Shown here in pieces: positions 2,325-43,887 of a stretch of DNA of 64,000 nucleotides. The stretch is taken from IMG/VR virus record IMGVR_UViG_3300017963_000188, positions 62,001 to 126,000 of that record. One strand, written 5' to 3'. Each line of letters starts with the position of its first letter. Position 1 is the first letter of the stretch. Under the pieces are notes generated by a model that did no database searches, was not told the DNA's origin, and saw only the letters and a list, made by a program, of their open reading frames with translations. Both the position numbers and the translations under genes were made by a program.

Positions 2325-3200
2325 ATGCCTAGTCCTGAAATAGCAGAACAAAATAAAGAAATAGCAGAACTTTCAAAACTCACTGGTATCAAACATAATA
2401 CAGGTACTGGTCAGGGAAATGAAGTTCTCTATGTTGATTTTGAAAAACCAGAAAGGATCGGATTCATTGAATTTGGTTTTGATCTCAAAACAGGAGCTTT
2501 TGGTGGTGCCGTGATCTACTACTCAGAAGACAAAGCCTTAGTGATTGAAGACATGCCAGAAGGTGCTTCAACTAAAGAAAAGGCTAGGTGGATTAAGGAT
2601 AAAGTCAACGAATGGACTAGTCAATATTTCGAAGGTTTAAAGTCTTCTTCACAGCTCAGGAAACTGGCTAGAAGCATTATTGGATATCGTATCAAAGACC
2701 TCCCTGACAATGCTTTTGAAGGTCATTACATTGGTTACAAGGGTGAAGATTTCATCAATTTTGATGACACATACCAGTTAGGTCTTGGTCATCCAGCTTT
2801 TGGTGGAGAGCATGAAGAGGATTGGACTGTCAGTGAAGAACTTGAAGAGATTGGAGCTGACACCACTAAACTAAATGCTATCTGGGAAAAACATCTCGGT
2901 AAACTCCATGATGCTTTTATTAAAGATTCTCTATACGATGGGACTACATATCAGGTTGTTCCAAATTTTGATGTATCAGGTTTTGACTATGCTTCACAGG
3001 ATGGTGGGTATTGGGTAGCAAACATTTCTGTTGATTTTGATGCAAAACCAAATCTTGAATCTACTGACATTGACCAAATCACACATCATCTAGATGATGT
3101 GGGATCAAGACTTGTGAGCAGAATGAAAGATTTGGCTACGGAACTTAATAGAGAATTTGACAGGCTTGGTGTGGAATTCAGATCTGAGGTTTGGTCTTAA
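2325..3200 (+). CDS. two-domain hypothetical protein with internal SSQLRKLARSI motif
   Basis: 291-aa ORF, GAGG SD. Confidence 0.8.
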   Translation: MPSPEIAEQNKEIAELSKLTGIKHNTGTGQGNEVLYVDFEKPERIGFIEFGFDLKTGAFGGAVIYYSEDKALVIEDMPEGASTKEKARWIKDKVNEWTSQYFEGLKSSSQLRKLARSIIGYRIKDLPDNAFEGHYIGYKGEDFINFDDTYQLGLGHPAFGGEHEEDWTVSEELEEIGADTTKLNAIWEKHLGKLHDAFIKDSLYDGTTYQVVPNFDVSGFDYASQDGGYWVANISVDFDAKPNLESTDIDQITHHLDDVGSRLVSRMKDLATELNREFDRLGVEFRSEVWS

Positions 3201-3607
3201 TGTATCGTTACGCTGATGAACATGACGATTTCGAGAAGATTTGGGGAGATTGGGATCGTGAACTAAAATCAAGAGGTTTTAGTCTAGCTAAACCCTGGAG
3301 TGGCGAGTGGGAGGTCGAAGGTAGACCTTGGGTGAAGGAACGTGGGAACATCCAGATTTGGGTCTATGTTGTGCCTCAGTGGGATCAGCAAGAAGTCATG
3401 GGTCGTGTGAAGAAACATCATTCAATCTATGGTCACATACAACTAAGACGAGTTCTAGATAGATTTGAACTCAAACCTAGATCACTTAGCAGTCTTCGTA
3501 ATATGAAAAGTAAGGGTCTTGAAAAGGTAGATTACTATCTAGAACAAATGGAAACAGGACTCCCCGATCTTAAAAAGTCCTCTCAGTCTTTTTCTTGGTA
3601 TTTCTGA
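3200..3607 (+). CDS. hypothetical protein with MYRY N-terminus
   Basis: TAATG coupling to upstream gene gives start 3200. Confidence 0.75.
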   Translation: MYRYADEHDDFEKIWGDWDRELKSRGFSLAKPWSGEWEVEGRPWVKERGNIQIWVYVVPQWDQQEVMGRVKKHHSIYGHIQLRRVLDRFELKPRSLSSLRNMKSKGLEKVDYYLEQMETGLPDLKKSSQSFSWYF

Positions 3608-3780
3608 AACACTGTTCTAATATCATTCCCTATAGCTTCCCAGTCACTATGCAGAGCCTCAGCATCTTTCTCCCACCACGGTCTGTTATCTATATTATGG
3701 GAACTGAGGGTGCTACCAAGATCAAGAGTGTGTGCCATTCCTTGCAGAAAGCTTTTCAACATGTTCTTTATATAACGCAT
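3583..3780 (-). CDS. small hypothetical protein
   Basis: 65-aa ORF at end of minus-strand run. Confidence 0.55.
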   Translation of the reverse strand: MRYIKNMLKSFLQGMAHTLDLGSTLSSHNIDNRPWWEKDAEALHSDWEAIGNDIRTVFQKYQEKD

Positions 3781-4057
3781 CTAATCTCTCATTTGCTTTT
3801 CGCATCATTTGGTCTCGTTCATGAGTAGCATCTTCTCTGTAATAGTTTACATCCCATCCACGACTAGTGCAAATCCAGAACTTACCTCCAAATCCAAGTA
3901 GTCCCTGAAATCTCCATTCTGAAACCCCACCCCACAGACAATCATCTTTGATATGATGACTTACAAACATGTCTCTCCACATGTCAGAATCATTTGCACC
4001 ACATTCCTCCACCAACACATCATAAACCTTGTTGGCCATTTCCTTGGTCATTGTCAT
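3722..4057 (-). CDS. hypothetical protein
   Basis: 111 aa, ATGA-coupled; EWRFQGLLGFGGKFW motif. Confidence 0.7.
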   Translation of the reverse strand: MTMTKEMANKVYDVLVEECGANDSDMWRDMFVSHHIKDDCLWGGVSEWRFQGLLGFGGKFWICTSRGWDVNYYREDATHERDQMMRKANERLDALYKEHVEKLSARNGTHS

Positions 4058-4353
4058 GTCACATTCCTTAGTATTTTAACAGGAGTCTTAGAACATATTG
4101 TCCAACCTGGAAGACCTGATTCTACGATCTCTTTTATCGTAGCAAATCTATTATTGGTGTCTACAGGCCAAGGGATGATACCTTCTCTATTTGAATTCTC
4201 ATCCCAAGAGTCTAGATATTCTACTGCTTCTTTCTCTGAAGGGAATGTGCAAGCAGCCGGTTGGCCTACAGAATCAAGTAGTGACCAAAACCCCAATCCC
4301 AAAGCCCCTCCAAGATATACTCCCATCTCTTTATGGTAGAGTACATATCTCAT
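4054..4353 (-). CDS. hypothetical protein
   Basis: 99 aa, coupled to both neighbours. Confidence 0.7.
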   Translation of the reverse strand: MRYVLYHKEMGVYLGGALGLGFWSLLDSVGQPAACTFPSEKEAVEYLDSWDENSNREGIIPWPVDTNNRFATIKEIVESGLPGWTICSKTPVKILRNVT

Positions 4354-4790
4354 GATTCGAGTTCGTTCCTATCCAGTTTGGACATCACTTTGAGGGATGA
4401 TATTATGAAGTTTGTTTCCTCATCTTCTGTTTCTGGCTCAATGATATGACATACTGCTTTTGTATTCTTGATTCTGGTTTGGATGTGTTTTGGAAGTTCT
4501 TTCCATTTCTGACCTTCAAGAGTTGTGAGAAGTTTCAATCCAGTAAGTGGGTATTCTCCTGCAACAAAATCCTTTACGGCACACAAACGTTCAGTCCCCA
4601 TAAGCATTACCATGGGTTCACTCTGACTCATCCTTCTGGCATAAAATGGTGGGAGGGGAATTCTGAGTAAAATGCATTCGATGACTCTGGATCGAATTTG
4701 ATCCAACATGGGAGTCTCATCTGGCAATTTGACATTCTTAATCACAGACCAAACTGTGGTATCTTTACTGGGCATCTTTATATATGGCAT
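4350..4790 (-). CDS. degenerate DUF262 (GmrSD/ParB-like) domain protein
   Basis: SRVIECILLRIPLPPFY and YPLTGLKLL...GQKWKELP; DGxQR replaced by MGTER. Confidence 0.6.
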   Translation of the reverse strand: MPYIKMPSKDTTVWSVIKNVKLPDETPMLDQIRSRVIECILLRIPLPPFYARRMSQSEPMVMLMGTERLCAVKDFVAGEYPLTGLKLLTTLEGQKWKELPKHIQTRIKNTKAVCHIIEPETEDEETNFIISSLKVMSKLDRNELES

Positions 4791-4800
4791 ACATAACTCC

Positions 4801-7755: not shown

Positions 7756-7766
7756 GATCTATACCG

Positions 7767-8213
7767 ATGATTTCCAATTTTTTAAACAAGATTATTTCCT
7801 GGTACAATTTAAAGAGGAGGTTAGTCATGAGAGGATTAGAATTTTGCAAAGAAGGTGGGAGTTACCAAGTCTATCTTGATGGGGACCTATTTTATGAAGC
7901 TGATGAAATAGCCATAGCTGTTGATTTTGACCCAGAGTACAAGACAAGTGTAGCTCATAAGCATGGGTCTGAAAAAGACGTTTCCCAATGGATCAGCAAG
8001 ACCAGAGAAGCATTTAGGTCAAAAGGATTCAATGATTATGCAGATCGTCTCATCATGATCAGTAGTGACAATTGGGATCTGGAAACATTGAATAGAATAT
8101 GGAATTGTACCGGATCTATCAACCAGTTCTTGAAGGAAAGTGGGATTACAACCGAGGACCTAAACCATTGTGGAGAGGCTGTGCCTGGATTTCAGGGTGT
8201 TCCTCTAATTTAG
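7767..8213 (+). CDS. hypothetical protein
   Basis: 148-aa ORF; probable start at internal MRGLEF after GAGGAGG. Confidence 0.6.
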   Translation: MISNFLNKIISWYNLKRRLVMRGLEFCKEGGSYQVYLDGDLFYEADEIAIAVDFDPEYKTSVAHKHGSEKDVSQWISKTREAFRSKGFNDYADRLIMISSDNWDLETLNRIWNCTGSINQFLKESGITTEDLNHCGEAVPGFQGVPLI

Positions 8214-10352: not shown

Positions 10353-10766
10353 ATGTTAAGTAAAGAACTGAAAAAGATTGCAAAGAACATTAATAACCCC
10401 CCGAAGACTTCTGCCTTCATGGAGCCTGAAATCATCTTGGATGATTGGGTTTCTGTCGATGGTCCTATGGGTGGGGAGTCTACCCCTGCTGAATATATAG
10501 ATCTTGATGAAGTAGCTGAACTTCAGAAAGAGATTGATGAAAAGGGTGAAGTCTCTCTGGAAGGAACTTCATTGAATGACTACTTCGAGAACCGTTCAGC
10601 CTATGAGATTGAAGTCTCCAAGGGATATGGTGCTCGTCTTTCAGCTCCTGGATATATGGATGCCACAGGTTGGTCTGTTTTTGACACTGAGGCAGAGGCC
10701 CGAGAATATCTGATGGAGACATATGACCTAGATGAAAATCTTGAAGAGATTGAAGAAGATTGGTAG
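10353..10766 (+). CDS. acidic hypothetical protein with SKELKKIAKNI leader
   Basis: 137 aa; GARLSAPGYMDATGW motif. Confidence 0.75.
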   Translation: MLSKELKKIAKNINNPPKTSAFMEPEIILDDWVSVDGPMGGESTPAEYIDLDEVAELQKEIDEKGEVSLEGTSLNDYFENRSAYEIEVSKGYGARLSAPGYMDATGWSVFDTEAEAREYLMETYDLDENLEEIEEDW

Positions 10767-18608: not shown

Positions 18609-18636
18609 ATTCTATACCGACCTGAACTCTTTTTTT
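18609..18636 (-). promoter_or_regulatory. class A promoter cassette
   Basis: A-tract-N11-CGGTATAGAAT then AGGAGGT before cca. Confidence 0.65.
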
Positions 18637-18727
18637 AAAGAGAATTCTAGACCTAAAATAAATAGAAAAACAATTGGTATAATAATCTGTTTTTGTTAGT
18701 CTAATTCAAACTAGGGTGGAGACAAGT

Positions 18728-30240: not shown

Positions 30241-30326
30241 TGGTGGGTGAGGAGGGACTCGAACCCTCAAGCCCGAAGGCACAGGAACCTAAATCCTGCG
30301 TGTCTACCAAGTTCCACCACTCACCC
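30241..30326 (-). tRNA. trnL: tRNA-Leu(UAG)
   Basis: cloverleaf, loop TTTAGGT, long variable arm, CCA. Confidence 0.95.
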
Positions 30327-30373
30327 AGCTTGCATCTCACCCAGCTTGCATCTCATCCAGCTTGCATCTCACC
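30320..30373. repeat. 16-bp tandem repeat (3.4 copies) overlapping tRNA-Leu 5' end
   Basis: CTCACCCAGCTTGCAT at 30320, 30336, 30352 (1 mismatch), partial 30368. Confidence 0.9.
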
Positions 30374-30531
30374 ACATCTGCCCGTTTCTTTGCAGCCTCT
30401 CTTTTTGCTTTTTCCTCTGCTTCTTTTTTCCTAACCATCTCCTTATGAGCATCACTTTCAAGATGGTCCTTAAGAGCTGATTCTCTCTTGAAACGTCTCA
30501 TACAAAGACTGCAAACAAACTTTGGAGGCAT
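30337..30531 (-). CDS. C2H2 zinc-finger small protein
   Basis: FVCSLCMRRF...LKDHLESDAH. Confidence 0.7.
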   Translation of the reverse strand: MPPKFVCSLCMRRFKRESALKDHLESDAHKEMVRKKEAEEKAKREAAKKRADVVRCKLDEMQAG

Positions 30532-30556
30532 CTTATCTCCTTCCTATGTTCTAAGG

Positions 30557-30583
30557 TTGTATACTGGACAGATTTGAATTTTT
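30557..30583 (-). promoter_or_regulatory. class A promoter
   Basis: AAAAAT-N11-CAGTATACAA. Confidence 0.55.
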
Positions 30584-30605
30584 GAAGGGATTTTTTGAAA
30601 GGTCA

Positions 30606-31433
30606 TTAGTCGATCCAGCTAACACCTTCCATTCGACCTTGATTGGATTCAGTGTTAGCAATGACTTTACGCCATTGTCTGATCTTAAGGGTTTTATGGT
30701 CCACATGCCTGATATTGCCCCTGACAAACACTTCTGGACGCTGACGCATGGGAAAGCCGTGACTCAAGGGGGTCCCTCCAAGCACTACCAGTTCCTCAGC
30801 AATGTGAGGGTTTCCACCAGCACGACCCGCATGGGCTCCAATGCTTTCCTTACGTTTCATCAGACCCATTTCCACAGCCTTTTCGATTTCTTTCTTCTCA
30901 GTATCTGTGGTGTTGAGGAAGAACCACTCCCCTTGCCTGAAGGTCCTCCCTTTTTGCTTCCCTTCTGCTGTCCATACAGTGGGGGCTTTGAGGCAGTTGT
31001 GTGCATCCCTGACCGTACTCACAGCTTTGGGGAGCTGAGCAATGAAGAGCTGTCGTTCATCCACTCCCATCAAGAAATGACGTTTGTTTTCTGGGGTGTA
31101 TTCCCGAACAACCCAATGCTTTTTGGTTTCCCGGATCGTATTCTTGGGTCTATCAGGGATACGAGACTTGTAGATCAGAGTCTCAAAGGGCCTACGTTTT
31201 TCATGGACCATCAACACAAGTTGACCCTTCTCTGCATCAGTACCCTGGACCAAGACCCGATTGGAATCATGGCCAGGATAAATCCTGAAGATTTCGGTAC
31301 GACGATTGCCCTTGATACGACGGTCAATATCCATACCGAAAACATCCTCTCCACCCGTACCACGAGTGAAAGGAGTGTTGGTAACTTCCACTTTGAGTCC
31401 TGCTCTCTCGAAACCTTTGACCAAATTTTCCAT
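30606..31433 (-). CDS. hypothetical protein (RQGEWFF motif)
   Basis: 275 aa; visibly higher GC than flanks. Confidence 0.8.
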   Translation of the reverse strand: MENLVKGFERAGLKVEVTNTPFTRGTGGEDVFGMDIDRRIKGNRRTEIFRIYPGHDSNRVLVQGTDAEKGQLVLMVHEKRRPFETLIYKSRIPDRPKNTIRETKKHWVVREYTPENKRHFLMGVDERQLFIAQLPKAVSTVRDAHNCLKAPTVWTAEGKQKGRTFRQGEWFFLNTTDTEKKEIEKAVEMGLMKRKESIGAHAGRAGGNPHIAEELVVLGGTPLSHGFPMRQRPEVFVRGNIRHVDHKTLKIRQWRKVIANTESNQGRMEGVSWID

Positions 31434-31494
31434 GGTACCATCTCCATTCTAGAAGTAACCACTCTAGAATTATACCAAGGGGTTATTTTTTTGG

Positions 31495-33450
31495 TTATTG
31501 ATCTAGAACAGACCTGATCTTTTTTGAGATTTCACTGAGACTGAAAGGCTTTTGAATAAATCCATCACAACCTTTTTCCAACACATATGAAGCTTTCCCA
31601 TTGATGTTGTATCCACTCATCAAGACAACTTTCACTTTTGGGTTTATCTTCTTCAGAGTGTCATATATCTCTGGACCCCCAATTCCTGGCAGCACCATAT
31701 CTAACAATATCAAGTCGATACTGTCTTGATGGTTCTTATAGAAATCAATAGCTTTTAAACCATCTTTTTCAGGATAAACCGTATATCCTATAGTACTGAG
31801 AAGTCTAGTAGCTGTTTTTATGATAATATCTTCATCATCTATCAACAATATACATTCTGATCCTATCTCTAACTGATCATCCTCTATTTTATTTTCAAAT
31901 AAGATCTCTTCAGCTCTGGGGAGATACACATTTACGGTAGTCCCTTCTCCTTCAACACTATGTAGAGAAATATCCCCCTCATGATTTTTGATGATACCAT
32001 ATGCTGAAGATAAGCCAAGACCAGAACCACGTCCTACTTCTTTGGTTGTGTAGAACGGATCAAAGGCTCGTTCTATTGTTTTATTACTCATCCCACACCC
32101 AGTATCTGTCACAGATAACTTGATATAATCACCAGGTTTTAAATGAAGAGATCCTATTTCAGATACTGATATATTTGAAGTAGTAATATAAAGATCACCT
32201 CCTGTTGGCATAGCTTGACTAGCATTGACAAACAGGTTCATAAGAACTTGTTCTATCTGGCCGGGATCTGCACTGACACTCCAAATATCACTCTTCAGAC
32301 TTTTATGCACAACAATATCTTTCCTAGTTCTGCTAAATATACCAATGCTATTGTTGACTAATACATTTATGTTTGAGGTTATGATATTTGAGGTGTCTAT
32401 GCCACGACGGGCAAAGCTAAGAAGTTGTGCAGTCAGATCAGCAGCTCTCTTACCACAAATCTCTATATCTATAAGTTCTTGGCTAGTCTTCCCTTCTTTC
32501 AAACGAAGTAAAGTAGCATTTGATAGTATACCCATCAAAAGGTTGTTGAAATCATGTGCTATTCCACCAGCCAAGGTTCCAATAGCTTCCATTTTCTGAG
32601 CATGGTAAAATTGAGTTTCAAGAGCTTTTCGATCTGTGATGTCCTCTCCATAACCAATACTATATTTTATATTACCCTCGTGATCATACAACACTGAATT
32701 GTGCCAAGCTATGAGTCTTTCTTCTCCAGTCTTTGTCAGTACAGGATTTTCATAGTATTCAGATAATTGTATTTCACCATTTATCAGATTATTAAAGACT
32801 TGTTTTACTTGAGGCACATATCTTTTTGGTAAGAAGTTTTCAAACCAGTTTTTACCAATTATATGCCTACAATCATCAGAATTATAACCTAATATCTGAC
32901 ATCCTTTCTTGTTTATAAGAGCAACATTTTGATTAGAATCAATTGTTACAAAAATCACATTAGCTACATTAAGGAACTCTTTCACTGTATTTTTTTCCAT
33001 CTTTAATTCTTTTTCTACTTCATATTGTTTAGTCACATCTACGATCTGTATTATTAGACCACCTTTAAAAAATGATGTGTGAAAAGAAGCTACTTTCTCA
33101 GCACCATCTTTACACGTTATTCTGAATACAGTGCAATCCTGTCCCTCACCCTTAAGAGCTTGTGTCACATTTTTCCAAACAAAATCTCTATATTCTCCAT
33201 CAGGATATAACCTTTCTACCCATTCTCCTACATTTTTGATTTCATCAGTAGTGTACCCAATGAATTTCTCTAGAGCTTTATTGAAAAGTACAATAGAACC
33301 ATCCGACCGTCCTATAGCCGTTGGTATTGGACTTTGAAGCACAATTAACGGAAAGCATAATTCAGAGTCTAGGATATCAACATCATATTCTGGAGATCCC
33401 CTAATATCTGCTAGAGCTTTCGCTTCTTTGTCCGACATTCCTTTGATCAT
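31495..33450 (-). CDS. PAS-PAS hybrid sensor histidine kinase/response regulator
   Basis: two PAS; AHDFNN H box, N/G1/F/G2 boxes; receiver LLIDDE...LLDMVLP...KPF. Confidence 0.95.
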   Translation of the reverse strand: MIKGMSDKEAKALADIRGSPEYDVDILDSELCFPLIVLQSPIPTAIGRSDGSIVLFNKALEKFIGYTTDEIKNVGEWVERLYPDGEYRDFVWKNVTQALKGEGQDCTVFRITCKDGAEKVASFHTSFFKGGLIIQIVDVTKQYEVEKELKMEKNTVKEFLNVANVIFVTIDSNQNVALINKKGCQILGYNSDDCRHIIGKNWFENFLPKRYVPQVKQVFNNLINGEIQLSEYYENPVLTKTGEERLIAWHNSVLYDHEGNIKYSIGYGEDITDRKALETQFYHAQKMEAIGTLAGGIAHDFNNLLMGILSNATLLRLKEGKTSQELIDIEICGKRAADLTAQLLSFARRGIDTSNIITSNINVLVNNSIGIFSRTRKDIVVHKSLKSDIWSVSADPGQIEQVLMNLFVNASQAMPTGGDLYITTSNISVSEIGSLHLKPGDYIKLSVTDTGCGMSNKTIERAFDPFYTTKEVGRGSGLGLSSAYGIIKNHEGDISLHSVEGEGTTVNVYLPRAEEILFENKIEDDQLEIGSECILLIDDEDIIIKTATRLLSTIGYTVYPEKDGLKAIDFYKNHQDSIDLILLDMVLPGIGGPEIYDTLKKINPKVKVVLMSGYNINGKASYVLEKGCDGFIQKPFSLSEISKKIRSVLDQ

Positions 33451-33514
33451 AAGAGCCCCTGATCTTTTTCGTACTATACAACTTATTTTTAGATTATATA
33501 ATAAAATAATTGAT

Positions 33515-33602
33515 TGGTGCCGGGGGAGGGAATCGAACCCTCACGAGATTTCTCTCATCGGATTTTGAATCCGACGTGTCTACCTAGTTCCACCACCCCG
33601 GC
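33515..33602 (-). tRNA. trnL: tRNA-Leu(CAA)
   Basis: stem TCGGA/TCCGA, loop TTCAAAA, CCA. Confidence 0.95.
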
Positions 33603-33606
33603 TATA

Positions 33607-33692
33607 TGGTGCTGGAGGAGGGATTTGAACCCTCAATCCCTTACGGGCATAGCGTCCTGAACGCTACGTGTATACCGTTCCACCACTCCAGC
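33607..33692 (-). tRNA. trnL: tRNA-Leu(CAG)
   Basis: loop TTCAGGA, CCA. Confidence 0.95.
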
Positions 33693-33700
33693 AAATTGTT

Positions 33701-33788
33701 TGGTGCCGGAAGAGGGAATCGAACCCCCACGGGACAAGTCCCACTAGGACCTAAACCTAGCGTGTCTGCCTAGTTCCACCATTCCGGC
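33701..33788 (-). tRNA. trnL: tRNA-Leu(UAG)
   Basis: loop TTTAGGT, CCA. Confidence 0.95.
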
Positions 33789-33789
33789 C

Positions 33790-33875
33790 TGGTGTCTGGG
33801 GAGGGGATCGAACCCTCAAGCCTTTCGGCACAGCGACCTCAACGCTGCGTGTCTACCTAATTTCACCACCCAGAC
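33790..33875 (-). tRNA. trnL: tRNA-Leu(GAG)
   Basis: loop TTGAGGT, CCA. Confidence 0.95.
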
Positions 33876-33877
33876 TT

Positions 33878-33962
33878 TGGTGCTCAGGGAGGGATTCGAA
33901 CCCTCAAGCCTTTCGGCACAGGATTCTTAGTCCTGCGTGTATACCAGTTCCACCACCCGAGC
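33878..33962 (-). tRNA. trnL: tRNA-Leu(AAG)
   Basis: stem CAGGA/TCCTG, loop CTAAGAA, CCA. Confidence 0.93.
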
Positions 33963-33969
33963 ATATTTT

Positions 33970-34056
33970 TGGTGCTGGGGGAGGGAATCGAACCCTCACG
34001 ACACAAGGCCAGGGGATTTTAAGTCCCCAGTGTCTACCTAATTCCACCACCCCAGC
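33970..34056 (-). tRNA. trnL: tRNA-Leu(UAA)
   Basis: loop CTTAAAA, CCA. Confidence 0.95.
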
Positions 34057-34297: not shown

Positions 34298-35224
34298 CTA
34301 AAAAATACTTCCGTCTTCATTAAATTCATATTCATTGACCATGATATTTTCATCTACATTCTCATCAGCCATCAACCAATCATATTCTTTTTCAAGAGCT
34401 TGGTAGTAATCTTGAGCATAGTATCGAGCTTGTTCAAGACCCCATTCATTGAGTTCTTCTACTTCTCTTTCAAGAGCCTCATCAAACTTGTCTACTTCAT
34501 CTTCTGACCAGTCATCAGCATCTTCATAATTATCTACAGATGGAGCACGGATGTCGTCACCGTGCATTGTATTTGAATGATAGTAATGCCCAGAATGAGT
34601 GATGTTGAGGTGATAATCCTCATAGTCTTCACCACCCATTTCTTCCATGAGCTTTACAAAAGAAGGGAATTGCTTTTCAGCACCTTCACTATGAATGAGC
34701 TTGAGAAGGTCTACAGAACCTTCCCAGCTTGCACCGTCACCCTGACTAGCAAAACCAGAAAAGTACATCTTGTCAATGTCAAAACCCTTTTTCTCACCAT
34801 CTTCCTTGAACTGCTCTTCAAGAAAATCCCACCACTCGTAATCAAGGGCTCCATCACGCCACCATTCACGAGCCTTATCTTTAGCTTGATCGTCAAGTTC
34901 GTCAAACTTGTAGACCTCTTTTTCAACGGTTCTTGGGAGAGCTACTTTTCTTTGTGACTGATATCTATACATGTTCGACCTCTTTGCTGCCTTGTTGAAA
35001 TACTTTACTGCCTCATCTTCTTTCTTGAAGTAATGACCCCAATAGAAACCATTGCCTTTAGACCATCTCCAGACACCCCAAGGTGATGCTGAAGAGTCAG
35101 AAAAACCTAAGGCATACCATTCCTGACCATCCTTACGTTTCACATTCCTGATATCGTATGCTCCAGCACTGGTTTCCATTCCTGGGGGTAACTGCACTCC
35201 TGCTGCTTTTTTATATCTATACAT
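34298..35224 (-). CDS. two-module hypothetical protein, each module beginning MYRY
   Basis: 308 aa; second module VYKFDELDDQAKDKAREW...NEYEFNEDG; internal SD+ATG at 34972. Confidence 0.85.
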   Translation of the reverse strand: MYRYKKAAGVQLPPGMETSAGAYDIRNVKRKDGQEWYALGFSDSSASPWGVWRWSKGNGFYWGHYFKKEDEAVKYFNKAAKRSNMYRYQSQRKVALPRTVEKEVYKFDELDDQAKDKAREWWRDGALDYEWWDFLEEQFKEDGEKKGFDIDKMYFSGFASQGDGASWEGSVDLLKLIHSEGAEKQFPSFVKLMEEMGGEDYEDYHLNITHSGHYYHSNTMHGDDIRAPSVDNYEDADDWSEDEVDKFDEALEREVEELNEWGLEQARYYAQDYYQALEKEYDWLMADENVDENIMVNEYEFNEDGSIF

Positions 35225-35233
35225 TTCAATCTC

Positions 35234-35590
35234 CTAGAAAGCACCTGGTTGAAACCAATTTCCAAAATCATGCTTATCAGTGACTTTAAGATGATCTCCC
35301 TCACTTACCTTAGGGAGCTTTTTACGAAGCCTGATACTCTTCATCTCTGACCTTTTACGAGCATTCTGCATCACAATATCAGCTTCTTCTTGATTATCCA
35401 CAGCAATAGCTATATAGCTTCGACCAGGAGCTTTACCCCACCCACTCATAAAGCTGTCGATCATGATGACGTAATTCCAAGGTTGGGTCTTTTTCTTACG
35501 AACATCTTCAATTTCCTGTCCTCTGATTGATCTCCAGGCAACATTCTCTGCTATTTTACTGAAATCCATGATATGTCTCCTATGTACCAA
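35234..35590 (-). CDS. hypothetical protein (FSKIAENVAWRSI leader)
   Basis: 118 aa; MIDSFMSGWG motif. Confidence 0.75.
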   Translation of the reverse strand: MVHRRHIMDFSKIAENVAWRSIRGQEIEDVRKKKTQPWNYVIMIDSFMSGWGKAPGRSYIAIAVDNQEEADIVMQNARKRSEMKSIRLRKKLPKVSEGDHLKVTDKHDFGNWFQPGAF

Positions 35591-35650: not shown

Positions 35651-35941
35651 ATGCAAATCAGTGCTCAATTAAGAAGACTAGCCAAAGAAATATATCAAGT
35701 GCGGTTAAGCCAAGATCTGATAGATCGTTTAGAAGATTGGGTTTTTGGAACCACAGGTTATGTATCTATAATTTTCAATAATTCTAGAAATTACAAAGAC
35801 GTACCTCTGCAATTAGTTCTAGATACAATATCTGAACTTGAGGGGCCTCTTTATCTAAAGAGCCCCACCCTATCTCTATACGAAAAAGATGAGATAAAAG
35901 ATTTGATCCGTCGATTGAAGAGCTATGTACCTATGCAGTAG
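35651..35941 (+). CDS. hypothetical protein with SAQLRRLAKEI leader
   Basis: 96 aa, AAGGAG SD. Confidence 0.7.
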   Translation: MQISAQLRRLAKEIYQVRLSQDLIDRLEDWVFGTTGYVSIIFNNSRNYKDVPLQLVLDTISELEGPLYLKSPTLSLYEKDEIKDLIRRLKSYVPMQ

Positions 35942-37815: not shown

Positions 37816-38538
37816 CTAAAATAGTTCCAGTTGCACTGGTATTCTAGGTTCCTTTCCTTTGATATATAATCTCTTATATCGACCAGAAGGAACCATCACA
37901 ATGTTGTCGATCACAATACCCTCTTGGATATATTTTGACAAACATAGACGTGCCGTACTGGTCGTTCTATAATGATGCTTGATATTATCTATAGCCTCTT
38001 TGAGATGGCAGCCTGGATGTAGGCTTACAAATCTAACAAGGTCTGAAACAGTTAATTGGAAGGGAGTAAAATACTTGTTCTGGTCATTACCTGCTTCTGC
38101 CCATGTCTTATGTTCTTCTCGTAAATTTTTCTTGAGCAACCAATGGACCTTTCTACGAAACTTTGGTTCCATAGATTCTATAACTTGATTATTTTTTCTA
38201 ACGTTTATTTCTATAAGTCCAATTCCAAAATGTTTACATAACGATGCTTCAAAGTCTCTTCGACCTGAGCTGTAAGACCTCCATTGGCCTTTTTTCTTTG
38301 GGACTGCTATTGAAACTCTATGGGCATATCTTGTCCAGAACATGGCTTGCTCAAGCACTTTGAGACTGAAACTGGTCTTCACCTCAATGACCCATAATAC
38401 AGGGTTCATCTTGGCTACAATGTCAGCTCTTGAACTGGTTCTGCTAGGATCAATCTCTACTTCTTGGTAAACTTCCCAATGGTGGTCCTGAAGCCAGTCC
38501 ACAACTGACTTTGCAATGTCAGATTCTTTTATTTTCAT
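37816..38538 (-). CDS. PD-(D/E)xK nuclease-like (MmcB-like) protein
   Basis: VYQEV...RADIVA...VIEVKTS. Confidence 0.7.
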   Translation of the reverse strand: MKIKESDIAKSVVDWLQDHHWEVYQEVEIDPSRTSSRADIVAKMNPVLWVIEVKTSFSLKVLEQAMFWTRYAHRVSIAVPKKKGQWRSYSSGRRDFEASLCKHFGIGLIEINVRKNNQVIESMEPKFRRKVHWLLKKNLREEHKTWAEAGNDQNKYFTPFQLTVSDLVRFVSLHPGCHLKEAIDNIKHHYRTTSTARLCLSKYIQEGIVIDNIVMVPSGRYKRLYIKGKEPRIPVQLELF

Positions 38539-39551
38539 TACTTGAGTTTGTTAGGAACGATCTGGGAATGCATCCAATGAGTAGAGGTTTGCACATGACC
38601 TTTTCTTACATATTTGGCAGTTGATTTTCTGAAATCCCGGTATCGAAATTCATCAACCACTCTGATTACATATCCTTCACATTCATCGTTGTCATAAGTT
38701 TCCTGGTACAAATTCTTAATGGTCTCTTCATCCCATATCCCTCTATAAAGAACCGGTACTGTTTCAAGACCTAAGAGTTGACACCATTCTACTGTGTCAT
38801 CCCAGGATAGGCAACGATTATTTTCATCCCAGATCGAGAATGTCATGAAATAACTGGGAAGATTCTCGTAGCTTATGGAATGAGCTGCATATAAATTCTC
38901 TCCACAAATTCTCCAATCTCTGGGGATCTCATAAGCCACTGAAGCATGGAGTGACTTCACCCAATGCCTCGATTCATGGTCCTTCGAGGTGATAGAACGA
39001 GCATGGATGTGACCTTGGTACATGGTAGTATTCTCACCATCCATCTTAATGGTCACTACAACTTCTTTACCTTCAAATTGGGAAGTATCCTGAAGGATCT
39101 TATCATCATCAGAAGCTCCAGGACTCCATGGTAAATGATAGGTCCTTGGATATTTATAGAACCCTATGAACGTGATCAGAGGATTTGCAGATCGAATCAT
39201 TTTCTCAGATTCAGAATATAATTCACCATGAAACCTGACCTTATGAGTCTTATCAGTACAGGGATTACCCCACTTGTCATACTCACCTTTTTTAAGATGA
39301 GGGGGTAGTAAGATAGTCTCGATACCAGCAGCTTCCCTAACCTCATTGGTGCTGACCGAAGTATCCTCAGCTTTGATGTGACAATCAGAACAAAGGGCAG
39401 CACCATTATCTAGATAGTATCCACCATCATCCCAAAGTTTACGTTCCATGATGTGGTGAGCATCTGAGGCAGGAGCCTGACAGATCACGCACTTGTGACC
39501 ATCTCGGTCCATTACGTTCTGTCTGAACTGGTCTCTAGTAAGCAGCATCAC
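38538..39551 (-). CDS. HNH domain fused to RNA ligase family domain
   Basis: RDGHKCVIC..DAHH..LCSDCH; KYPRTYHL, KMDGEN, GENL, EGYVIR, AKYVR. Confidence 0.85.
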   Translation of the reverse strand: MMLLTRDQFRQNVMDRDGHKCVICQAPASDAHHIMERKLWDDGGYYLDNGAALCSDCHIKAEDTSVSTNEVREAAGIETILLPPHLKKGEYDKWGNPCTDKTHKVRFHGELYSESEKMIRSANPLITFIGFYKYPRTYHLPWSPGASDDDKILQDTSQFEGKEVVVTIKMDGENTTMYQGHIHARSITSKDHESRHWVKSLHASVAYEIPRDWRICGENLYAAHSISYENLPSYFMTFSIWDENNRCLSWDDTVEWCQLLGLETVPVLYRGIWDEETIKNLYQETYDNDECEGYVIRVVDEFRYRDFRKSTAKYVRKGHVQTSTHWMHSQIVPNKLK

Positions 39552-39646: not shown

Positions 39647-39811
39647 ATGAAAGCATGGGGAATTGAACATCTAGAAGAATTGAAGCAGGCCCAACAGGTC
39701 CAACCACAGCAACTCCAATTGGAACTTGATGTGCCTACCTATCCTGAGTACGATAATTCTGAAGAGAAATTTGATTCAGAAGTGAGTTTTGAGGTTGATT
39801 TCTCGATCTAA
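39647..39811 (+). CDS. 54-aa acidic protein (below ORF-track cutoff)
   Basis: MKAWGIEHLEELKQ...; cassette and AGGAGG SD. Confidence 0.6.
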   Translation: MKAWGIEHLEELKQAQQVQPQQLQLELDVPTYPEYDNSEEKFDSEVSFEVDFSI

Positions 39812-40143
39812 CGTCTACGAGTCCTACGAACCCTATTTTGCCTAGCCTTACGAGCCTTACGTTTTTTAGCACCCATGATAGCTCTTTGAGCTTCTTGGAC
39901 AGCTTTAGATAGATCTTCAACCTTTCTCAGTTCCTGATCGCTAAGGTCTTGAATCTTGACATCACCCCAACCTTTGAATAGCTCTTCTAGATCTTCACCA
40001 AGATCCTTGAACATTTCAACGTCTTGAGCTTTCTTATTTCTAGCAGTCCTAACTACTTCTGTTGGGATCACCCATTCATTGTCGTGGGACTTGTGAATTT
40101 TACGAGCCCTACGGGGGCTTCGATTATCATTGTAACGGTACAT
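39808..40143 (-). CDS. basic protein with MYRY N-terminus and Arg/Lys tail
   Basis: 111 aa, AAGGAG SD; RNKKAQ; ends RRTRRR. Confidence 0.75.
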   Translation of the reverse strand: MYRYNDNRSPRRARKIHKSHDNEWVIPTEVVRTARNKKAQDVEMFKDLGEDLEELFKGWGDVKIQDLSDQELRKVEDLSKAVQEAQRAIMGAKKRKARKARQNRVRRTRRR

Positions 40144-41665: not shown

Positions 41666-41671
41666 TTCTTC

Positions 41672-41699
41672 AAAAATCTGAAAACCCTCAGTATATAAT
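41672..41699 (+). promoter_or_regulatory. class A promoter cassette
   Basis: AAAAATCTG-N8-CAGTATATAAT-AGGAGGTG. Confidence 0.7.
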
Positions 41700-41714
41700 C
41701 TTAGGAGGTGCTCC

Positions 41715-42017
41715 ATGAAAGTCACCACTGAGAAAGGTCATCCAGCTCTTATCGATGGAGCTGTCAGAATCACTTTCAAAGACCATACCGGCAAGACCAT
41801 GACCTGGCTTGCCAAAAAGATTGGTACATGCACCTGGAAGAGACTTGATCTAGAAGGTGGTTGGTGGCAAAAAAGCACCACCGAGAATGGCACTGAAATT
41901 GTAAAGGAAGAGGTGCTTGTAGCCAATCCTGACGAATTTCTCAAACACATCTTGATGCGAATGAATCTTCATTATGGTAAATATGAACCCATCACAGGCG
42001 AAGAAAAGGAGCGTTAA
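41715..42017 (+). CDS. hypothetical protein
   Basis: 100 aa, cassette upstream. Confidence 0.7.
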   Translation: MKVTTEKGHPALIDGAVRITFKDHTGKTMTWLAKKIGTCTWKRLDLEGGWWQKSTTENGTEIVKEEVLVANPDEFLKHILMRMNLHYGKYEPITGEEKER

Positions 42018-42021
42018 ATGT

Positions 42022-42099
42022 GGCAAAGAATCCGGCAAAGAATCCGGCAACCATTGCCGGATTCTGGGGATAAGTAAAATATTGAAATGTATCCGGCAA
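42022..42099. repeat. ATCCGGCAA direct and inverted repeat cluster
   Basis: copies at 42030, 42042, 42091 (+) and 42054..42062 (reverse complement). Confidence 0.85.
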
Positions 42100-42109
42100 G
42101 GAGATTAAG

Positions 42110-42349
42110 ATGAAATGTAAATTTTGTGGTGGCACTGCTGGGTCATTGATTGATGGGGCTCATGCTTTGTGTGCGGCTCGTAAGGAACGTAACCTTCCAA
42201 CACCATGTCTAGGATATCGATGTCAGACCTGTAATGGGCATGGTCGAATCCCCAAGACCAAATATGGACCAATAAATCCAAACCAAGCAGCTATTGATGC
42301 CTGGGCTCCACCATGTCCTGATTGTGATGGGAAGGGACATACTTTCTGA
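42110..42349 (+). CDS. Cys-rich small protein
   Basis: 79 aa; DnaJ-like CxxCxGxG repeats. Confidence 0.65.
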   Translation: MKCKFCGGTAGSLIDGAHALCAARKERNLPTPCLGYRCQTCNGHGRIPKTKYGPINPNQAAIDAWAPPCPDCDGKGHTF

Positions 42350-42388
42350 ACCTTTAAATATTTCCTGCATTTTTTCATTTTTTAATTT

Positions 42389-42416
42389 AAAAATCTGAAA
42401 AGTATCAGTATAGAAT
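42389..42416 (+). promoter_or_regulatory. class A promoter cassette
   Basis: AAAAATCTG-N8-CAGTATAGAAT-AGGAGGTG. Confidence 0.7.
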
Positions 42417-42432
42417 AGTAGGAGGTGACGAT

Positions 42433-43005
42433 ATGATGAAAGGCTGCCGACCACTCAATGAGCAAGAAGTAGAAAAAATCATCAGTTTCTTCAGCAAGAA
42501 CCGCTATGGGCTTCGTGACATTGCCTTGGTTCTGTTGGGACTTTACACTGGTCGTCGTATCAGCCAACTTCTGTCCGTCAAGGTTGAGGATGTCTACAAC
42601 TCCAAGACCGATAAGGTAAACGACCGTCTCTGGTTTGCTCGTCAACATGTCAAGGGTAAACGTGAAGGTGAGGTCGTGATACTTCATCCCAAAGTCAAGA
42701 CTGCCATCAAGACTTGGGTGGAGGCTATGCCTACTTCTGACTTCTTGTTCTGTTCCCAGAAAGGTGGGGCTATCTCTCGGATGCAAGCTCATCGAATCCT
42801 CAAAGAGGCTGTAGAAGTCTTAAACCTAGAAGGCAAGGTTGCCACTCATAGCATGAGGAAAACCTTTGCCAAGAAGATGTACGGTGCCCTGGACAATGAT
42901 ATCTATCGTCTCCAAAGGGCTATGGGTCACACTGATATCAAGACCACTGTGAAGTACCTGAGCTTCCAGCAGGAAGATATCGATGATGCTATCCTGGGGA
43001 TGTAA
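42433..43005 (+). CDS. tyrosine recombinase, catalytic domain only
   Basis: GRRISQLL (R), HSMRKTF (HxxR), MGH, TVKYL (Y); 190 aa. Confidence 0.92.
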   Translation: MMKGCRPLNEQEVEKIISFFSKNRYGLRDIALVLLGLYTGRRISQLLSVKVEDVYNSKTDKVNDRLWFARQHVKGKREGEVVILHPKVKTAIKTWVEAMPTSDFLFCSQKGGAISRMQAHRILKEAVEVLNLEGKVATHSMRKTFAKKMYGALDNDIYRLQRAMGHTDIKTTVKYLSFQQEDIDDAILGM

Positions 43006-43006
43006 G

Positions 43007-43381
43007 ATGAAGATTGGAATACAGCAAGCCTCAAAGCTCCAACAGAACATGTCAGCTACACACCATCTTGATCGTTGTATTCACTGCGGTAAGCCAGAAG
43101 GTGATATACGATATCACCAAGATGGAGAATGTGGTAGTTACCAAAGAATATTTATAAAAACCGGAACCACTTTTGAAAACGCTACCTCTCTACAGAGATT
43201 GAAAGAGATAGAACATACTATCCCTTACATGGAGCATGAACTAACCTATGGGTGGGGCTCTCAAGAAGAGCTTGATGAGGCTCGTAAAGAAGCTGCTGAG
43301 TTGAGAAAAAAATTAGGTTTGGGATGGTATGGCTATGAACCTATTGATCAATCCGAGCCAGAATCCGATCCACAACATTAG
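43007..43381 (+). CDS. hypothetical protein
   Basis: ATG right after recombinase stop. Confidence 0.6.
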   Translation: MKIGIQQASKLQQNMSATHHLDRCIHCGKPEGDIRYHQDGECGSYQRIFIKTGTTFENATSLQRLKEIEHTIPYMEHELTYGWGSQEELDEARKEAAELRKKLGLGWYGYEPIDQSEPESDPQH

Positions 43382-43604
43382 CCTCTCTGAATAATTCTAC
43401 CCCAGCTCGTTCCTTCAAAGCATCTCCCAACATTATCATTGTTGAGGTAGCTTCTGAAAGATGATCTGAAACATCCTGAAGAGCATCATCAATATCGATG
43501 CGTTTAAATTCTCGTGGTAGAGGTACAGAGTCTATAAACTCTTTGGTCTTACGTAACTCTTCAAAGACCTCTTCCAACTTATCATAGACTTCTGAAGGTC
43601 TCAT
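43341..43604 (-). CDS. helical hypothetical protein with C-terminal NVVDRILAR motif
   Basis: ATGA coupling at 43601-04. Confidence 0.7.
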   Translation of the reverse strand: MRPSEVYDKLEEVFEELRKTKEFIDSVPLPREFKRIDIDDALQDVSDHLSEATSTMIMLGDALKERAGVELFREANVVDRILARIDQ

Positions 43605-43887
43605 TTCCACCAGTAGTTCCATCTATTTTTGGTTGTGCCCATACCATCGACAACCTGAGTGAGTTTACTTGTCCATGAGAAAAACTCATTCAGTGTATCT
43701 TCAATCTCACCTTCTAGTCCCTGACGACCAGCTTCAGAAAGTTCTTCTAAAAGTTCCTCAAGTGTGTCTTGAGATTCTTCTAGCTGCCCAATTCCTTCTC
43801 TAGCTTTAGTGATAGCATCATTGAGTTTATTGACATATCCAGACATCTCTGGAAGAGCAGCAGATTTTTTGTTCGATACCGGTACAT
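43601..43887 (-). CDS. helical protein; MYRY start (43887) joins body only via -1 frameshift
   Basis: AGGAGG SD before 43887; A AAA AAT run; track ORF 43601..43846 has no SD. Confidence 0.6.

What the first reader, a model, noticed from the sequence alone, without database searches (positions are those of the whole stretch)
3200..43887. Motif III: five MYRY starts written with different codons
MYRY begins ORFs at 3200+, 35224-, 40143- and 43887-, and an internal module at 34972-. Four different codon strings are used (TAT/TAC; CGT/AGA/CGG), so conservation is at peptide level. Four are followed by KKAA, RKVA, KKAQ or KKSAA (the last needs the frameshift at 43865).
Basis: seen in the sequence. 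Interest (0 to 1): 0.7.

Follow-up and report, generated by a model that had tools for sequence, protein, structure and literature searches.

The report
Shared MYRY leader on phage proteins
An uncultured 358-kb phage starts at least ten unrelated accessory proteins with the same four residues, Met-Tyr-Arg-Tyr, usually followed by a basic stretch ending in alanine; this most likely is a removable address label, like the capsid-targeting peptide of phage T4, and related huge phages have their own versions.

Summary
The window is part of a 358,038-bp virus record. MYRY occurs 16 times in its six frames, against 1.6 simulated. Nine to ten called genes start with it, against 0.03 expected, all between 17.5 and 106 kb. 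Two more copies sit at domain junctions.

The tagged proteins are not alike beyond the tag. Three 12-residue tags are saturated at synonymous sites but nearly identical as peptides. A fragment of a related phage also has a MYRY start. 23 more distant huge phages do not, but three read in full carry other short N-terminal leaders on unrelated proteins.

Leaders end at a basic-x-Ala junction. In two MYRY tags the next residue is Met. In a third the next residue aligns with Met1 of free-standing homologues.

The same junction motif is over-represented in the putative prohead protease, the scaffold and neighbouring head proteins. This holds in this phage and, more clearly, in a relative.

Best reading: a capsid-targeting, protease-removed leader (confidence about 0.45). 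Rivals are a cytoplasmic docking or degradation tag, an RNA-binding arginine-rich peptide, and a translation effect. No virion or expression data exist.

The parts
3200..3607 (+). 135-aa gene starting MYRYADEHDD. The ATG overlaps the stop of the upstream ORF (2325-3200). This is the only acidic continuation of the tag.
34298..35224 (-). 308-aa protein with two leaders: MYRYKKAAG, then an 84-aa domain, then MYRYQSQRKVA, then a 213-aa domain of family phrog_5162.
35213..35224 (-). First MYRY (ATG TAT AGA TAT), with SD AGGAGA five bases upstream.
34940..34972 (-). Internal leader MYRYQSQRKVA with its own SD-like AAGAGG. The next residue (Leu) aligns with Met1 of free-standing homologues in CcrPW and in metagenomes (MPRTV.., MPRIK..).
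39808..40143 (-). 111-aa basic protein starting MYRYNDNRSPRRARK, with NKKAQ at residues 36-40 and SD AAGGAGA.
43780..43887 (-). 35-codon ORF starting MYRYRTKN, behind the best SD of the set (AAGGAGG). It overlaps the next ORF, which lies in its -1 frame.
43864..43870 (-). A AAA AAT in the zero-frame phase of a classical -1 slippery heptamer. A -1 slip would join the MYRY leader (..SAALPE) to the 81-aa ORF.
43601..43846 (-). 81-aa acidic helical ORF (MSGYVNK..) with no SD of its own. It is the presumed body of the frameshifted MYRY gene.
35651..35941 (+). 96-aa gene with a second leader class of this phage (MQISAQLRRLAKEI). It is one of 8 such genes with unrelated bodies.
10353..10766 (+). 137-aa gene of the same second class (MLSKELKKIAKNI).
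46077..46715 (-). 212-aa gene with a third leader class (MEMDLISRVIERSKKAQ).
60667..61194 (+). 175-aa gene of the third class (MDIVSRVIQRYLRAS).

Best explanation
MYRY is the invariant head of a short N-terminal leader (4 to about 20 residues). This phage lineage puts it in front of at least ten unrelated accessory proteins of its non-structural arm.

In its full form the leader reads MYRY-(R/K)(K/R/Q)-A-R-(R/K)-V-R-A. Weaker forms end in KKA(A/M/Q), KRAG or RKVA. I propose that the leader is an address label that carries its cargo into the assembling prohead. There it would associate with the scaffold and protease, both of which have long acidic stretches. The prohead protease would cut it off just after the alanine. 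The trimmed cargo would then be injected with the DNA. [quoted passage not shown]

Shown:
- The tag is real, is selected as a peptide, sits on unrelated proteins, and is an add-on.
- The junction lies after a basic-x-Ala motif.
- That motif is over-represented in head-assembly proteins.

Inferred:
- Cleavage at the junction.
- The protease responsible.
- Packaging into the capsid and injection.
For: (1) Enrichment and real starts.

(2) Peptide-level selection: pS 0.8-1.1 against pN 0.04-0.16 in three tags whose bodies cannot be aligned. None of the 36 pairs of MYRY proteins shows body homology.

(3) The tag is an add-on.
- Homologues of the C-terminal domain in GAP32, PMBT3, CcrPW and metagenomes begin exactly where MYRYQSQRKVA ends.
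- RVRA is followed directly by Met in two tags.
- A 57%-identical module in another phage fragment (P0244 on L154) also starts MYRY, although the 100-180 residues after the tag are different.

(4) The junction motif appears in head proteins.
- [KR][KR]V[KR]?A has 15 hits in 113,000 residues. Four are in MYRY tags. Five are in the putative protease, the scaffold-like protein, a 163-aa neighbour and a 621-aa protein next to the terminase. Composition-preserving shuffles give 0.16 for those four head proteins (P about 2e-4).
- In the protease, LRRVA|S lies at the end of the conserved domain, just before the acidic linker. Three orthologues have basic-x-A-(F/Y) at the same place.

(5) The same logic is clearer in relative G020.
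- Eight of the 15 leader-bearing proteins that a motif pattern picked out have K[KQ][AS][SGAM] in residues 5-50, against 8 of 356 others.
- The 690-aa scaffold has the motif six times, against 0.5 in shuffles. One copy is KKAGVG, identical to one leader's end.

(6) In G010, paralogues with swapped leaders share their bodies from ..KQA|GIFEAPPAM onward.

(7) Two MYRY genes carry the CTTTT(T)AT upstream motif otherwise seen before structural genes.

(8) Precedent: in T4 a diverse set of internal defence proteins shares only the capsid-targeting sequence (PMC3012670).
Against: - There are no virion, proteomic or transcript data. Only DNA assemblies exist.
- The MYRY genes lie among small early-looking genes. 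Most have variants of the TATAG(A/T) promoter class that is common there, not a structural-gene context.
- Three tags (MYRYADEHDD, MYRYSRSWFE, MYRYNDNRSP) have no clear junction motif close by.
- The protease is named only by a PHROG match (E 6e-11). Pfam, NCBIfam and PDB sequence searches found nothing, and its model was too poor to use.
- The complex prediction of protease, scaffold and a tagged protein gave no answer.
- The motif regexes were chosen after looking at the tags.
- In G010 a leader sits on a CCA-adding enzyme, which is not an obvious capsid passenger.
Confidence: 0.45

Rival explanations
1. A cytoplasmic recognition tag with no link to the capsid. The exposed aromatic-basic N-terminus would be bound by a host or phage machine (an AAA+ unfoldase or protease, a chaperone, or a hub protein). 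That would set the lifetime, folding or place of a set of early accessory proteins.
For: - Position among small early-looking genes with the common TATAG(A/T) promoter class.
- Strict need for the free Met-Tyr N-terminus.
- Net charge of +3 to +6 in the first 14 residues of most tags, against 6% of genes reaching +4.
- From general knowledge, ClpX, ClpS, trigger factor, SecB and ClpB all favour aromatic plus basic segments.
- Leaders on enzymes such as a CCA-adding enzyme in G010.
Against: - No ClpS, ClpP or deformylase gene in the phage.
- It does not explain why the junction motif recurs in the protease, scaffold and head neighbours.
- It does not explain why the tag ends exactly at an ancestral Met.
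- No shared degradation tag on many phage proteins is known to me.
Confidence: 0.25
2. An arginine-rich nucleic-acid-binding peptide, like the N-terminal RNA-binding motifs of lambda N or HIV Rev. It would tether different effector domains to an RNA or to DNA.
For: - MYRYRQARRVRA, MYRYRKARRVRA and MYRYKRARKVRA are Arg-rich with flanking aromatics.
- At least one leader-bearing cargo in a relative is an RNA-handling enzyme.
Against: - The invariant part is MYRY, not the arginines.
- Several tags are neutral or acidic (MYRYADEHDD, MYRYSRSWFE).
- Other leader classes of the clade are acidic (MNPRKAFEEAL, MEKIANPQELAQEL).
- No recurrent RNA hairpin target was found.
Confidence: 0.1
3. A translation effect. 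The first four residues or codons would set initiation or early-elongation efficiency, or gate expression on the phage's own tRNAs, so that a group of genes is co-regulated.
For: - The motif is tied to the start codon.
- The window holds 28 tRNA genes, including two tRNA-Tyr.
- From general knowledge, residues 3-5 can change expression by orders of magnitude.
Against: - Four different Arg codons and both Tyr codons are used, which argues against gating by one tRNA.
- Conservation extends 8 more residues in several tags.
- It explains neither the basic-Ala junction nor its link to head proteins.
Confidence: 0.1
4. No function: chance, or the last recognisable remnant of one duplicated gene family.
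For: - About 1.6 MYRY per genome are expected by chance. The three short ORFs (genome 9344-, 77037-, 353723+) and the copy at genome 54247-, 26 codons inside a called gene, fit that.
Against: - Poisson P about 2e-19 for the gene starts.
- Synonymous sites are saturated while the peptide is kept.
- The bodies are unrelated.
- A MYRY start occurs in another phage on a reshuffled protein.
Confidence: 0.02

Closest known systems
Capsid-targeting sequence (CTS) of the phage T4 internal proteins (IPI, IPII, IPIII, Alt)
   Same: - A peptide of about 10 residues at the extreme N-terminus is the only thing shared by otherwise diverse, fast-evolving accessory or anti-defence proteins (PMC3012670).
- It ends at the prohead-protease site, so the mature protein lacks it.
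- The MYRY tag is 11-12 residues long in its clearest copies and ends where the native protein begins.
   Different: - No sequence likeness to the T4 peptide, and no Peptidase_S77 (gp21-type) match in this genome.
- The junction is basic-x-Ala, not the hydrophobic-x-Glu of T4 (general knowledge).
- Ten or more cargo genes are scattered over 90 kb.
- Several leader classes coexist in one genome.
- Packaging is not shown here.
N-terminal propeptides of head and inner-body (ejection) proteins of giant phages phiKZ, 201phi2-1 and SPN3US
   Same: A giant phage in which many head-internal proteins are trimmed by the prohead protease at a short consensus that also occurs in scaffold-like proteins (PMC5694885 and PMC7411985 listed; details from general knowledge).
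   Different: - As far as I know, those propeptides share only the cleavage consensus (S/A/G-x-Glu), not a common N-terminal word.
- This phage belongs to a different, uncultured clade. The closest cultured terminase is 29% identical, in Tunturiibacter phage Tunturi_5.
Herpesvirus assemblin release and maturation sites ((V/L)-x-Ala|Ser)
   Same: - Cleavage after Ala with Val two or three places before it.
- One site at the end of the protease domain and one near the C-terminus of the scaffold.
- Here LRRVA|S ends the protease domain. AKKS|S in G000 and SKKA|S in G020 lie about 55 residues from the scaffold C-terminus.
   Different: - The resemblance is recalled from general knowledge, not tested.
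- The fold of the phage protease could not be modelled.
Head-packaged anti-restriction proteins of phage P1 (Dar system)
   Same: Defence-countering proteins that ride in the capsid and enter with the DNA (PMC9024508 listed; general knowledge).
   Different: Dar incorporation depends on an ordered set of partner proteins, not on one shared N-terminal word.
Leader peptides cut by a dedicated protease (double-glycine bacteriocin leaders; the N-terminal extension of ribosomal protein L27 and of Staphylococcus phage 80alpha capsid and scaffold proteins, cut by Prp)
   Same: A short conserved N-terminal leader with a fixed junction motif, removed to give the active protein.
   Different: - Different motifs and proteases.
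- No C39 or Prp search was run here.

Membership tests
T4-type capsid-targeting leader on internal or ejection proteins (functional class) | A short N-terminal peptide is the only region shared by otherwise unrelated proteins of one phage | tested here: met
   Ten N-terminal and two junction copies. None of 36 body pairs is homologous.
T4-type capsid-targeting leader on internal or ejection proteins (functional class) | The leader is under selection as a peptide | tested here: met
   pS 0.8-1.1 against pN 0.04-0.16. All synonymous codon choices are used.
T4-type capsid-targeting leader on internal or ejection proteins (functional class) | The leader ends in the prohead-protease cleavage motif, which also occurs in scaffold, protease and other head proteins | tested here: inconclusive
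   - G000: the motif [KR][KR]V[KR]?A occurs 5 times in four head-module proteins, against 0.16 in shuffles.
- G020: K[KQ][AS][SGAM] occurs 6 times in the scaffold against 0.5, and in 8 of 15 leader proteins.
- Cleavage itself has not been seen, and three tags lack the motif.
T4-type capsid-targeting leader on internal or ejection proteins (functional class) | Tagged proteins are present in proheads or virions with the leader removed | not testable with these tools
   Uncultured phage. Only DNA assemblies were found.
T4-type capsid-targeting leader on internal or ejection proteins (functional class) | The leader is sufficient to package a foreign protein | not testable with these tools
   Needs an experiment.
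T4-type capsid-targeting leader on internal or ejection proteins (functional class) | A gp21-type (Peptidase_S77) prohead protease | tested here: not met
   PF03420 has no match in the genome. The candidate protease matches phrog_18299 only. So this is not a member of the T4 family itself, only possibly an analogue.
Programmed -1 ribosomal frameshift (43887- gene) | Slippery heptamer X XXY YYZ in the zero-frame phase, with the downstream ORF in the -1 frame | tested here: met
   ACA AAA AAT at 43872-43864. The two ATGs are 41 nt apart.
Programmed -1 ribosomal frameshift (43887- gene) | A stimulatory RNA structure a few bases downstream | tested here: not met
   Only a 6-bp hairpin, 10 nt downstream. 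The fold is no better than shuffles (z 0.29).
Programmed -1 ribosomal frameshift (43887- gene) | The same reading in independent genomes, or a detected fusion product | tested here: inconclusive
   The run of six A is identical in an ENA assembly and two Logan runs, but these are the same phage population. No protein data exist.
Bacterial N-degron / ClpS pathway | N-terminal Leu, Phe, Trp or Tyr exposed after removal of Met, and a ClpS adaptor | tested here: inconclusive
   Tyr-Arg-Tyr would be a good degron if Met were removed, but no such step is known. The phage has no ClpS or ClpP. The host is unknown.

The most novel reading that the evidence does not exclude
Uncultured huge phages of this terminase clade use a multi-class N-terminal address code. 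Several short leader words occur: MY(R/S)Y.., ..RV.xR(Y/F)L.A, ..L(R/K)(R/K)IA(K/R).., MNPRKAFEEAL, MD..RWK, MISQKLASLEARIAKLE. The words differ from phage to phage, are swapped between paralogues, and each ends at a basic-x-Ala junction. Together they mark up to about 9% of the genes of a genome. They could sort an arsenal of accessory proteins into the capsid, or to different destinations or times, with an assemblin-like protease removing the label.
Probability: 0.3. Interest if true: 0.85.

Novelty: new variant of a known kind. Interest (0 to 1): 0.72.

Why it matters
If the leader is a capsid address, it names in one step the proteins that an uncultured 358-kb phage injects with its DNA. 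Those are the first weapons to meet host defences. It would also give a rule (leader word plus basic-x-Ala junction) for finding such cargo in hundreds of metagenomic huge phages whose genes are otherwise unannotatable.

It would show that the T4 strategy of many cargoes behind one label arose independently, with a different protease specificity and on a much larger scale. A 12-residue label that is cut off cleanly at the native Met would also be a practical tool for loading foreign proteins into large capsids.

Even if the destination is not the capsid, a peptide label kept on unrelated proteins while every synonymous site has turned over points to a receptor that is still unknown.

Tried and rejected
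- No near-identical DNA in the phage collection.
- The 80-aa MYRY protein has no homologue among 5.8 billion proteins except itself.
- The strong-tag DNA pattern finds only this phage's own contig in IMG/VR and in JGI metagenomes. The G010 pattern MYSYDHRK finds only G010.
- Pfam and PHROGs give nothing for eight of the ten MYRY proteins.
- Atlas searches place the two larger cargo domains in unnamed phage families. One structural match is to bacterial clusters auto-named 'antitoxin'. This is not informative about function.
- Looser N-terminal patterns (M[YFWH][RK][YFWH], GTG/TTG starts) add no further members, so the word is strict.
- A small HMM of the post-MYRY segment ranks the scaffold first among non-tag proteins, but at only 6.7 bits. 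It was replaced by the regex-and-shuffle tests.
- The idea that a Glu-ending (T4- or phiKZ-like) site follows the tag was considered and dropped. The residue before Glu is inconsistent.
- The complex prediction gave no answer.
- The AlphaFold model of the protease from four sequences reached pLDDT 42, so no fold search was run.
- PDB, Pfam and NCBIfam give no name for the protease.
- Sequencing runs hold only contigs of DNA metagenomes. There is no read-level or RNA evidence for the frameshift or for timing.
- The copy at genome 54247- was rejected as a tag. It lies 26 codons inside a called gene, has no SD, and sits within a ..RTGLGLREAK.. segment that I recall as typical of L7/L12-like domains.

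Full report
WHAT THE WINDOW IS. The window is bases 62,001-126,000 of a single 358,038-bp virus record with 40.6% G+C. The record has a large terminase, a portal, a putative head-maturation protease, a scaffold-like protein and an HK97-type major head protein. It also encodes a chaperonin-like protein, ribonucleotide reductase and many tRNAs. It is therefore a huge tailed phage. It is known only from metagenomes: the same sequence appears in two IMG/VR fragments, an ENA assembly and two Logan runs from sediment and seawater. Its terminase has hundreds of 42-50% identical relatives on contigs of 200-600 kb. The closest cultured phage is only 29% identical.

THE OBSERVATION. Over the whole genome the pattern ATG-TAY-(CGN/AGR)-TAY occurs 16 times in six frames. 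Second-order Markov simulations give 1.6 (maximum 4 in 30), and the reversed pattern occurs twice.

Ten copies are gene starts: genome 17549+, 27148+, 27669+, 42125-, 43293-, 44950-, 65200+, 97224-, 102143- and 105887-. Two sit inside proteins at what look like domain junctions, 27217+ and 96972-, each with its own SD-like sequence. Four are probably chance: three ORFs of 9-15 codons, and one copy 26 codons inside a called gene.

MYRY is by far the commonest N-terminal tetrapeptide of this genome, at 11 against at most 3. Nine of 543 called genes start with it against 0.034 expected, P about 2e-19. Gene calls made by others on independent assemblies use these ATGs. All copies lie between 17.5 and 106 kb, in arrays of small genes without database matches.

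IT IS A PEPTIDE TAG, NOT A GENE FAMILY OR A DNA ELEMENT.
- Without their first residues the MYRY proteins (35 to 496 aa) show no significant pairwise similarity.
- Both Tyr codons and four Arg codons are used.
- The three longest tags (MYRYRQARRVRA, MYRYRKARRVRA, MYRYKRARKVRA) differ at nearly every synonymous site (pS 0.8-1.1) but hardly at replacement sites (pN 0.04-0.16).
- YRY is preceded by Met in 12 of 27 cases in this genome, against about 1 in 10-20 in three relatives.
- Relaxed versions of the word add no members.

IT IS AN ADD-ON. The C-terminal 213 residues of the 308-aa window protein belong to a widespread phage family, phrog_5162. Free-standing members begin MPRTV.. or MPRIK.., exactly at the residue after MYRYQSQRKVA in the window protein. 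In the closest relative of that protein (P0123, 61% identical) the domain is instead fused to the homologue of the window's upstream gene. The linker is ..QSRKLSKKVKA.. and there is no MYRY.

In two tags RVRA is followed directly by Met. The 496-aa MYRY protein is a mosaic whose modules occur separately elsewhere. One module is 57% identical to part of a 338-aa protein on a 3.6-kb contig of a related phage. That contig shares three other genes at 47-66% identity. Its protein also starts MYRY, behind the same AGGAGATTGAA spacer as the window gene at 35224, yet the 100-180 residues after the tag are unrelated. The word is therefore kept through module shuffling in at least two phages.

THE WIDER PATTERN. 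Twenty-three huge-phage relatives (terminase 42-50% identical) have 0-4 matches to the DNA pattern. The long form of the tag occurs nowhere else in IMG/VR or in JGI metagenomes. I read three relatives in full, called genes roughly, and clustered the first 30 residues. Each genome has its own families of short N-terminal leaders on bodies that are mostly not homologous.
- G020 has a cluster of 22 proteins, most with M(I/Y/F)xQKLASLEARLAKLE-like N-termini. Several copies are identical at DNA level, ribosome-binding site included.
- G010 has about 20 with ..RV(V/A)xR(Y/F)(L/Q)xA, 8 with M(x)YSYD(H/R)R.., 6 with MD..RWK, 11-13 with MNPRKAFEEAL and 6-9 with MEKIANPQELAxEL.
- G005 has a few RVVxRFLxA.
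- This phage has, besides MYRY, eight MLSxELRKIAKxI and about four ..SRV(I/V)xRS.

G010's MYSYDHRKVAI closely resembles the window's MYRYQSQRKVAL, so MYRY is a local version of a clade-wide word. In G010, paralogues carry different leaders on the same body, with the shared part beginning at ..KQA|GIFEAPPAM or ..A|KKKVPPEF. The leaders are therefore exchangeable modules with a defined junction after an alanine preceded by basic residues.

LINK TO HEAD ASSEMBLY. The junction motif recurs in head proteins.

In this phage:
- [KR][KR]V[KR]?A has 15 hits in 113,000 residues. Four are in MYRY tags and one is in another leader.
- Five more are in the putative protease, the scaffold-like protein, a 163-aa neighbour and a 621-aa protein beside the terminase. 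Composition-preserving shuffles of those four proteins give 0.16 (P about 2e-4). Leaving out the 621-aa protein gives 3 against 0.09.
- In the protease the site LRRVA|S lies exactly where conservation among four orthologues stops and an acidic linker begins. The orthologues have QKSA|F, SRAA|F and QKAA|Y there.
- The scaffold N-termini align as SRRRRRA|DAYEM, AKRRA|N.. and ALKKVA|DPYTM.

In G020:
- Eight of the 15 leader-bearing proteins that a motif pattern picked out have K[KQ][AS][SGAM] in residues 5-50, against 8 of 356 others. Within-segment shuffles give 0.5.
- The 690-aa scaffold has that motif six times against 0.5. One copy is KKAGVG, identical to the end of one leader. Another, SKKA|S, lies about 55 residues from the C-terminus, aligned with AKKS|S of this phage.
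- The G005 scaffold has three copies against 0.25.

A motif repeated in a scaffold, placed at the end of a protease domain and at the end of removable leaders is what one expects of a prohead-protease site. It resembles the (V/L)-x-Ala|Ser sites of herpesvirus assemblin, whose fold phage prohead proteases share. That comparison is from general knowledge and was not tested here. In addition, two MYRY genes (genome 17549 and 105887) and one gene of the second leader class carry a CTTTT(T)AT motif 20-70 nt upstream. That motif is otherwise seen mainly before structural genes.

BEST EXPLANATION AND ITS LIMITS. I read the MYRY leader as an analogue of the T4 capsid-targeting sequence. In T4 a diverse set of defence-countering internal proteins shares only that short N-terminal peptide, which brings them into the scaffolding core (PMC3012670). 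Here the address would be MYRY plus a basic stretch that could bind the very acidic scaffold and protease linkers. The protease would cut after the alanine and regenerate the native N-terminus. In three cases that N-terminus is the ancestral Met or its replacement.

The 308-aa protein with two leaders would be cut into two cargo proteins. Alternatively, the internal copy is a second start.

Cleavage, packaging and injection are all inferred. Points against this reading:
- The genes sit in an early-looking region, mostly with the promoter class TTTAAAAA-N12-13-(C/G)(A/G)GTATAG(A/T) that is common there.
- Three tags lack a nearby junction motif.
- The protease is named only by a PHROG match (nothing).
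- Its model failed and the complex prediction gave no answer.
- The motifs were defined after inspection.

I put the full mechanism at about 0.45. That the tag is a functional, selected peptide label I put above 0.95.

RIVALS.
- A cytoplasmic recognition or degradation tag fits the early context and the aromatic-basic nature of the peptide. It does not explain the link to head proteins or the exact junction, and the phage has no ClpS, ClpP or deformylase.
- An arginine-rich RNA-binding peptide fits three tags. It does not fit the invariant MYRY, the acidic MYRYADEHDD, or the acidic leader classes of relatives.
- A translation effect fits the tie to the start codon. It does not fit the four Arg codons or the conserved continuation.
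- Chance or relic paralogy is excluded for the twelve good copies.

THE FRAMESHIFTED COPY. At 43887- a strong SD precedes MYRYRTKN.., which ends after 35 codons. The 81-aa ORF at 43846- has no SD and lies in the -1 frame. ACA AAA AAT is a correctly phased slippery heptamer. A slip would give a leader ending ..SAALPE directly before the ORF's own Met. The sequence is the same in all available assemblies, which are the same phage population. No significant downstream structure is predicted. Programmed frameshifting, a decayed tag and translational coupling all remain possible.

NOVELTY. I found no paper describing MYRY or shared N-terminal leaders in huge phages. The principle is known from T4. 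The word, the junction, the number of cargo genes, the coexistence and swapping of several leader classes, and the spread over an uncultured clade are new, at least as far as these searches reach.

Noticed in passing
window 42386-42413 (+), 7759-7786 (-), 18612-18639 (-); many more in the genome: A strongly conserved promoter-like element: TTTAAAAA, 12-13 bases, (C/G)(A/G)GTATAG(A/T), ending about 15 bases before the SD. It has 3 exact copies in the window against 0.01 expected. It lies in front of dozens of genes of the non-structural arm and is rare in the structural block. It explains the roughly 52-nt stretch that other contigs of the same phage share with 42384-42436.
   Followed up: partly
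genome 174-237 kb, and window 43894-43906 region (upstream of 43887-): A second upstream motif, CTTTT(T)AT, 20-70 nt before starts. It is found before 7 structural genes and 8 others, three of which carry N-terminal leaders. It may be a late promoter class.
   Followed up: partly
window 30241-34056 and 48980-63801 (- strand): 28 tRNA genes, grouped by amino acid: seven tRNA-Leu covering six different anticodons, four Ser, three Thr, and two each of Tyr, Lys, Phe, Gly and Asp. This is an unusually complete phage tRNA set.
   Followed up: no
window 31495-33450 (-): A 651-aa ORF that, read by eye and not searched against any library, looks like a hybrid sensor histidine kinase (PAS-like, kinase and receiver segments). 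It lies inside the phage genome, between tRNA-Leu genes, and is preceded by a TATAG-type promoter-like sequence.
   Followed up: no
window 38538-39551 (-): One ORF that joins an HNH endonuclease motif to an RNA ligase domain (Pfam HNH plus RNA_ligase).
   Followed up: no
It is probably one of the 1-2 chance copies expected per genome.
   Followed up: yes
window 35234-35590 (-) and relative L153 2046-3023: In a 31% G+C relative, the homologue of this 118-aa gene is fused in one 325-aa protein to the homologue of the C-terminal domain of the 308-aa MYRY protein. The 84-aa middle domain and both MYRY words are missing there.
   Followed up: partly
relative G020 (loci L096-L111): 42003+, 42407+, 44926+, 45846+, 46492+, 152536+ and others: 22 small proteins cluster by their N-termini, most of them MISQKLASLEARIAKLE-like. 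Three copies are identical at DNA level, including 25 bases upstream, so the leader cassette is being copied between genes.
   Followed up: partly
relative G010 (loci L112-L131), e.g. 298-302 kb: Runs of adjacent small genes, each starting with one of five leader words. A CCA-adding enzyme (PolyA_pol, RNA-binding and HD domains) carries an approximately 40-residue N-terminal extension with the RVVQRYL leader.
   Followed up: partly
genome 54247 (-), outside the window: This MYRY lies inside a called 170-aa gene, in a segment ..MYRYRTGLGLREAK.. that I recall as typical of the C-terminal domain of ribosomal protein L7/L12. No search was run.
   Followed up: no
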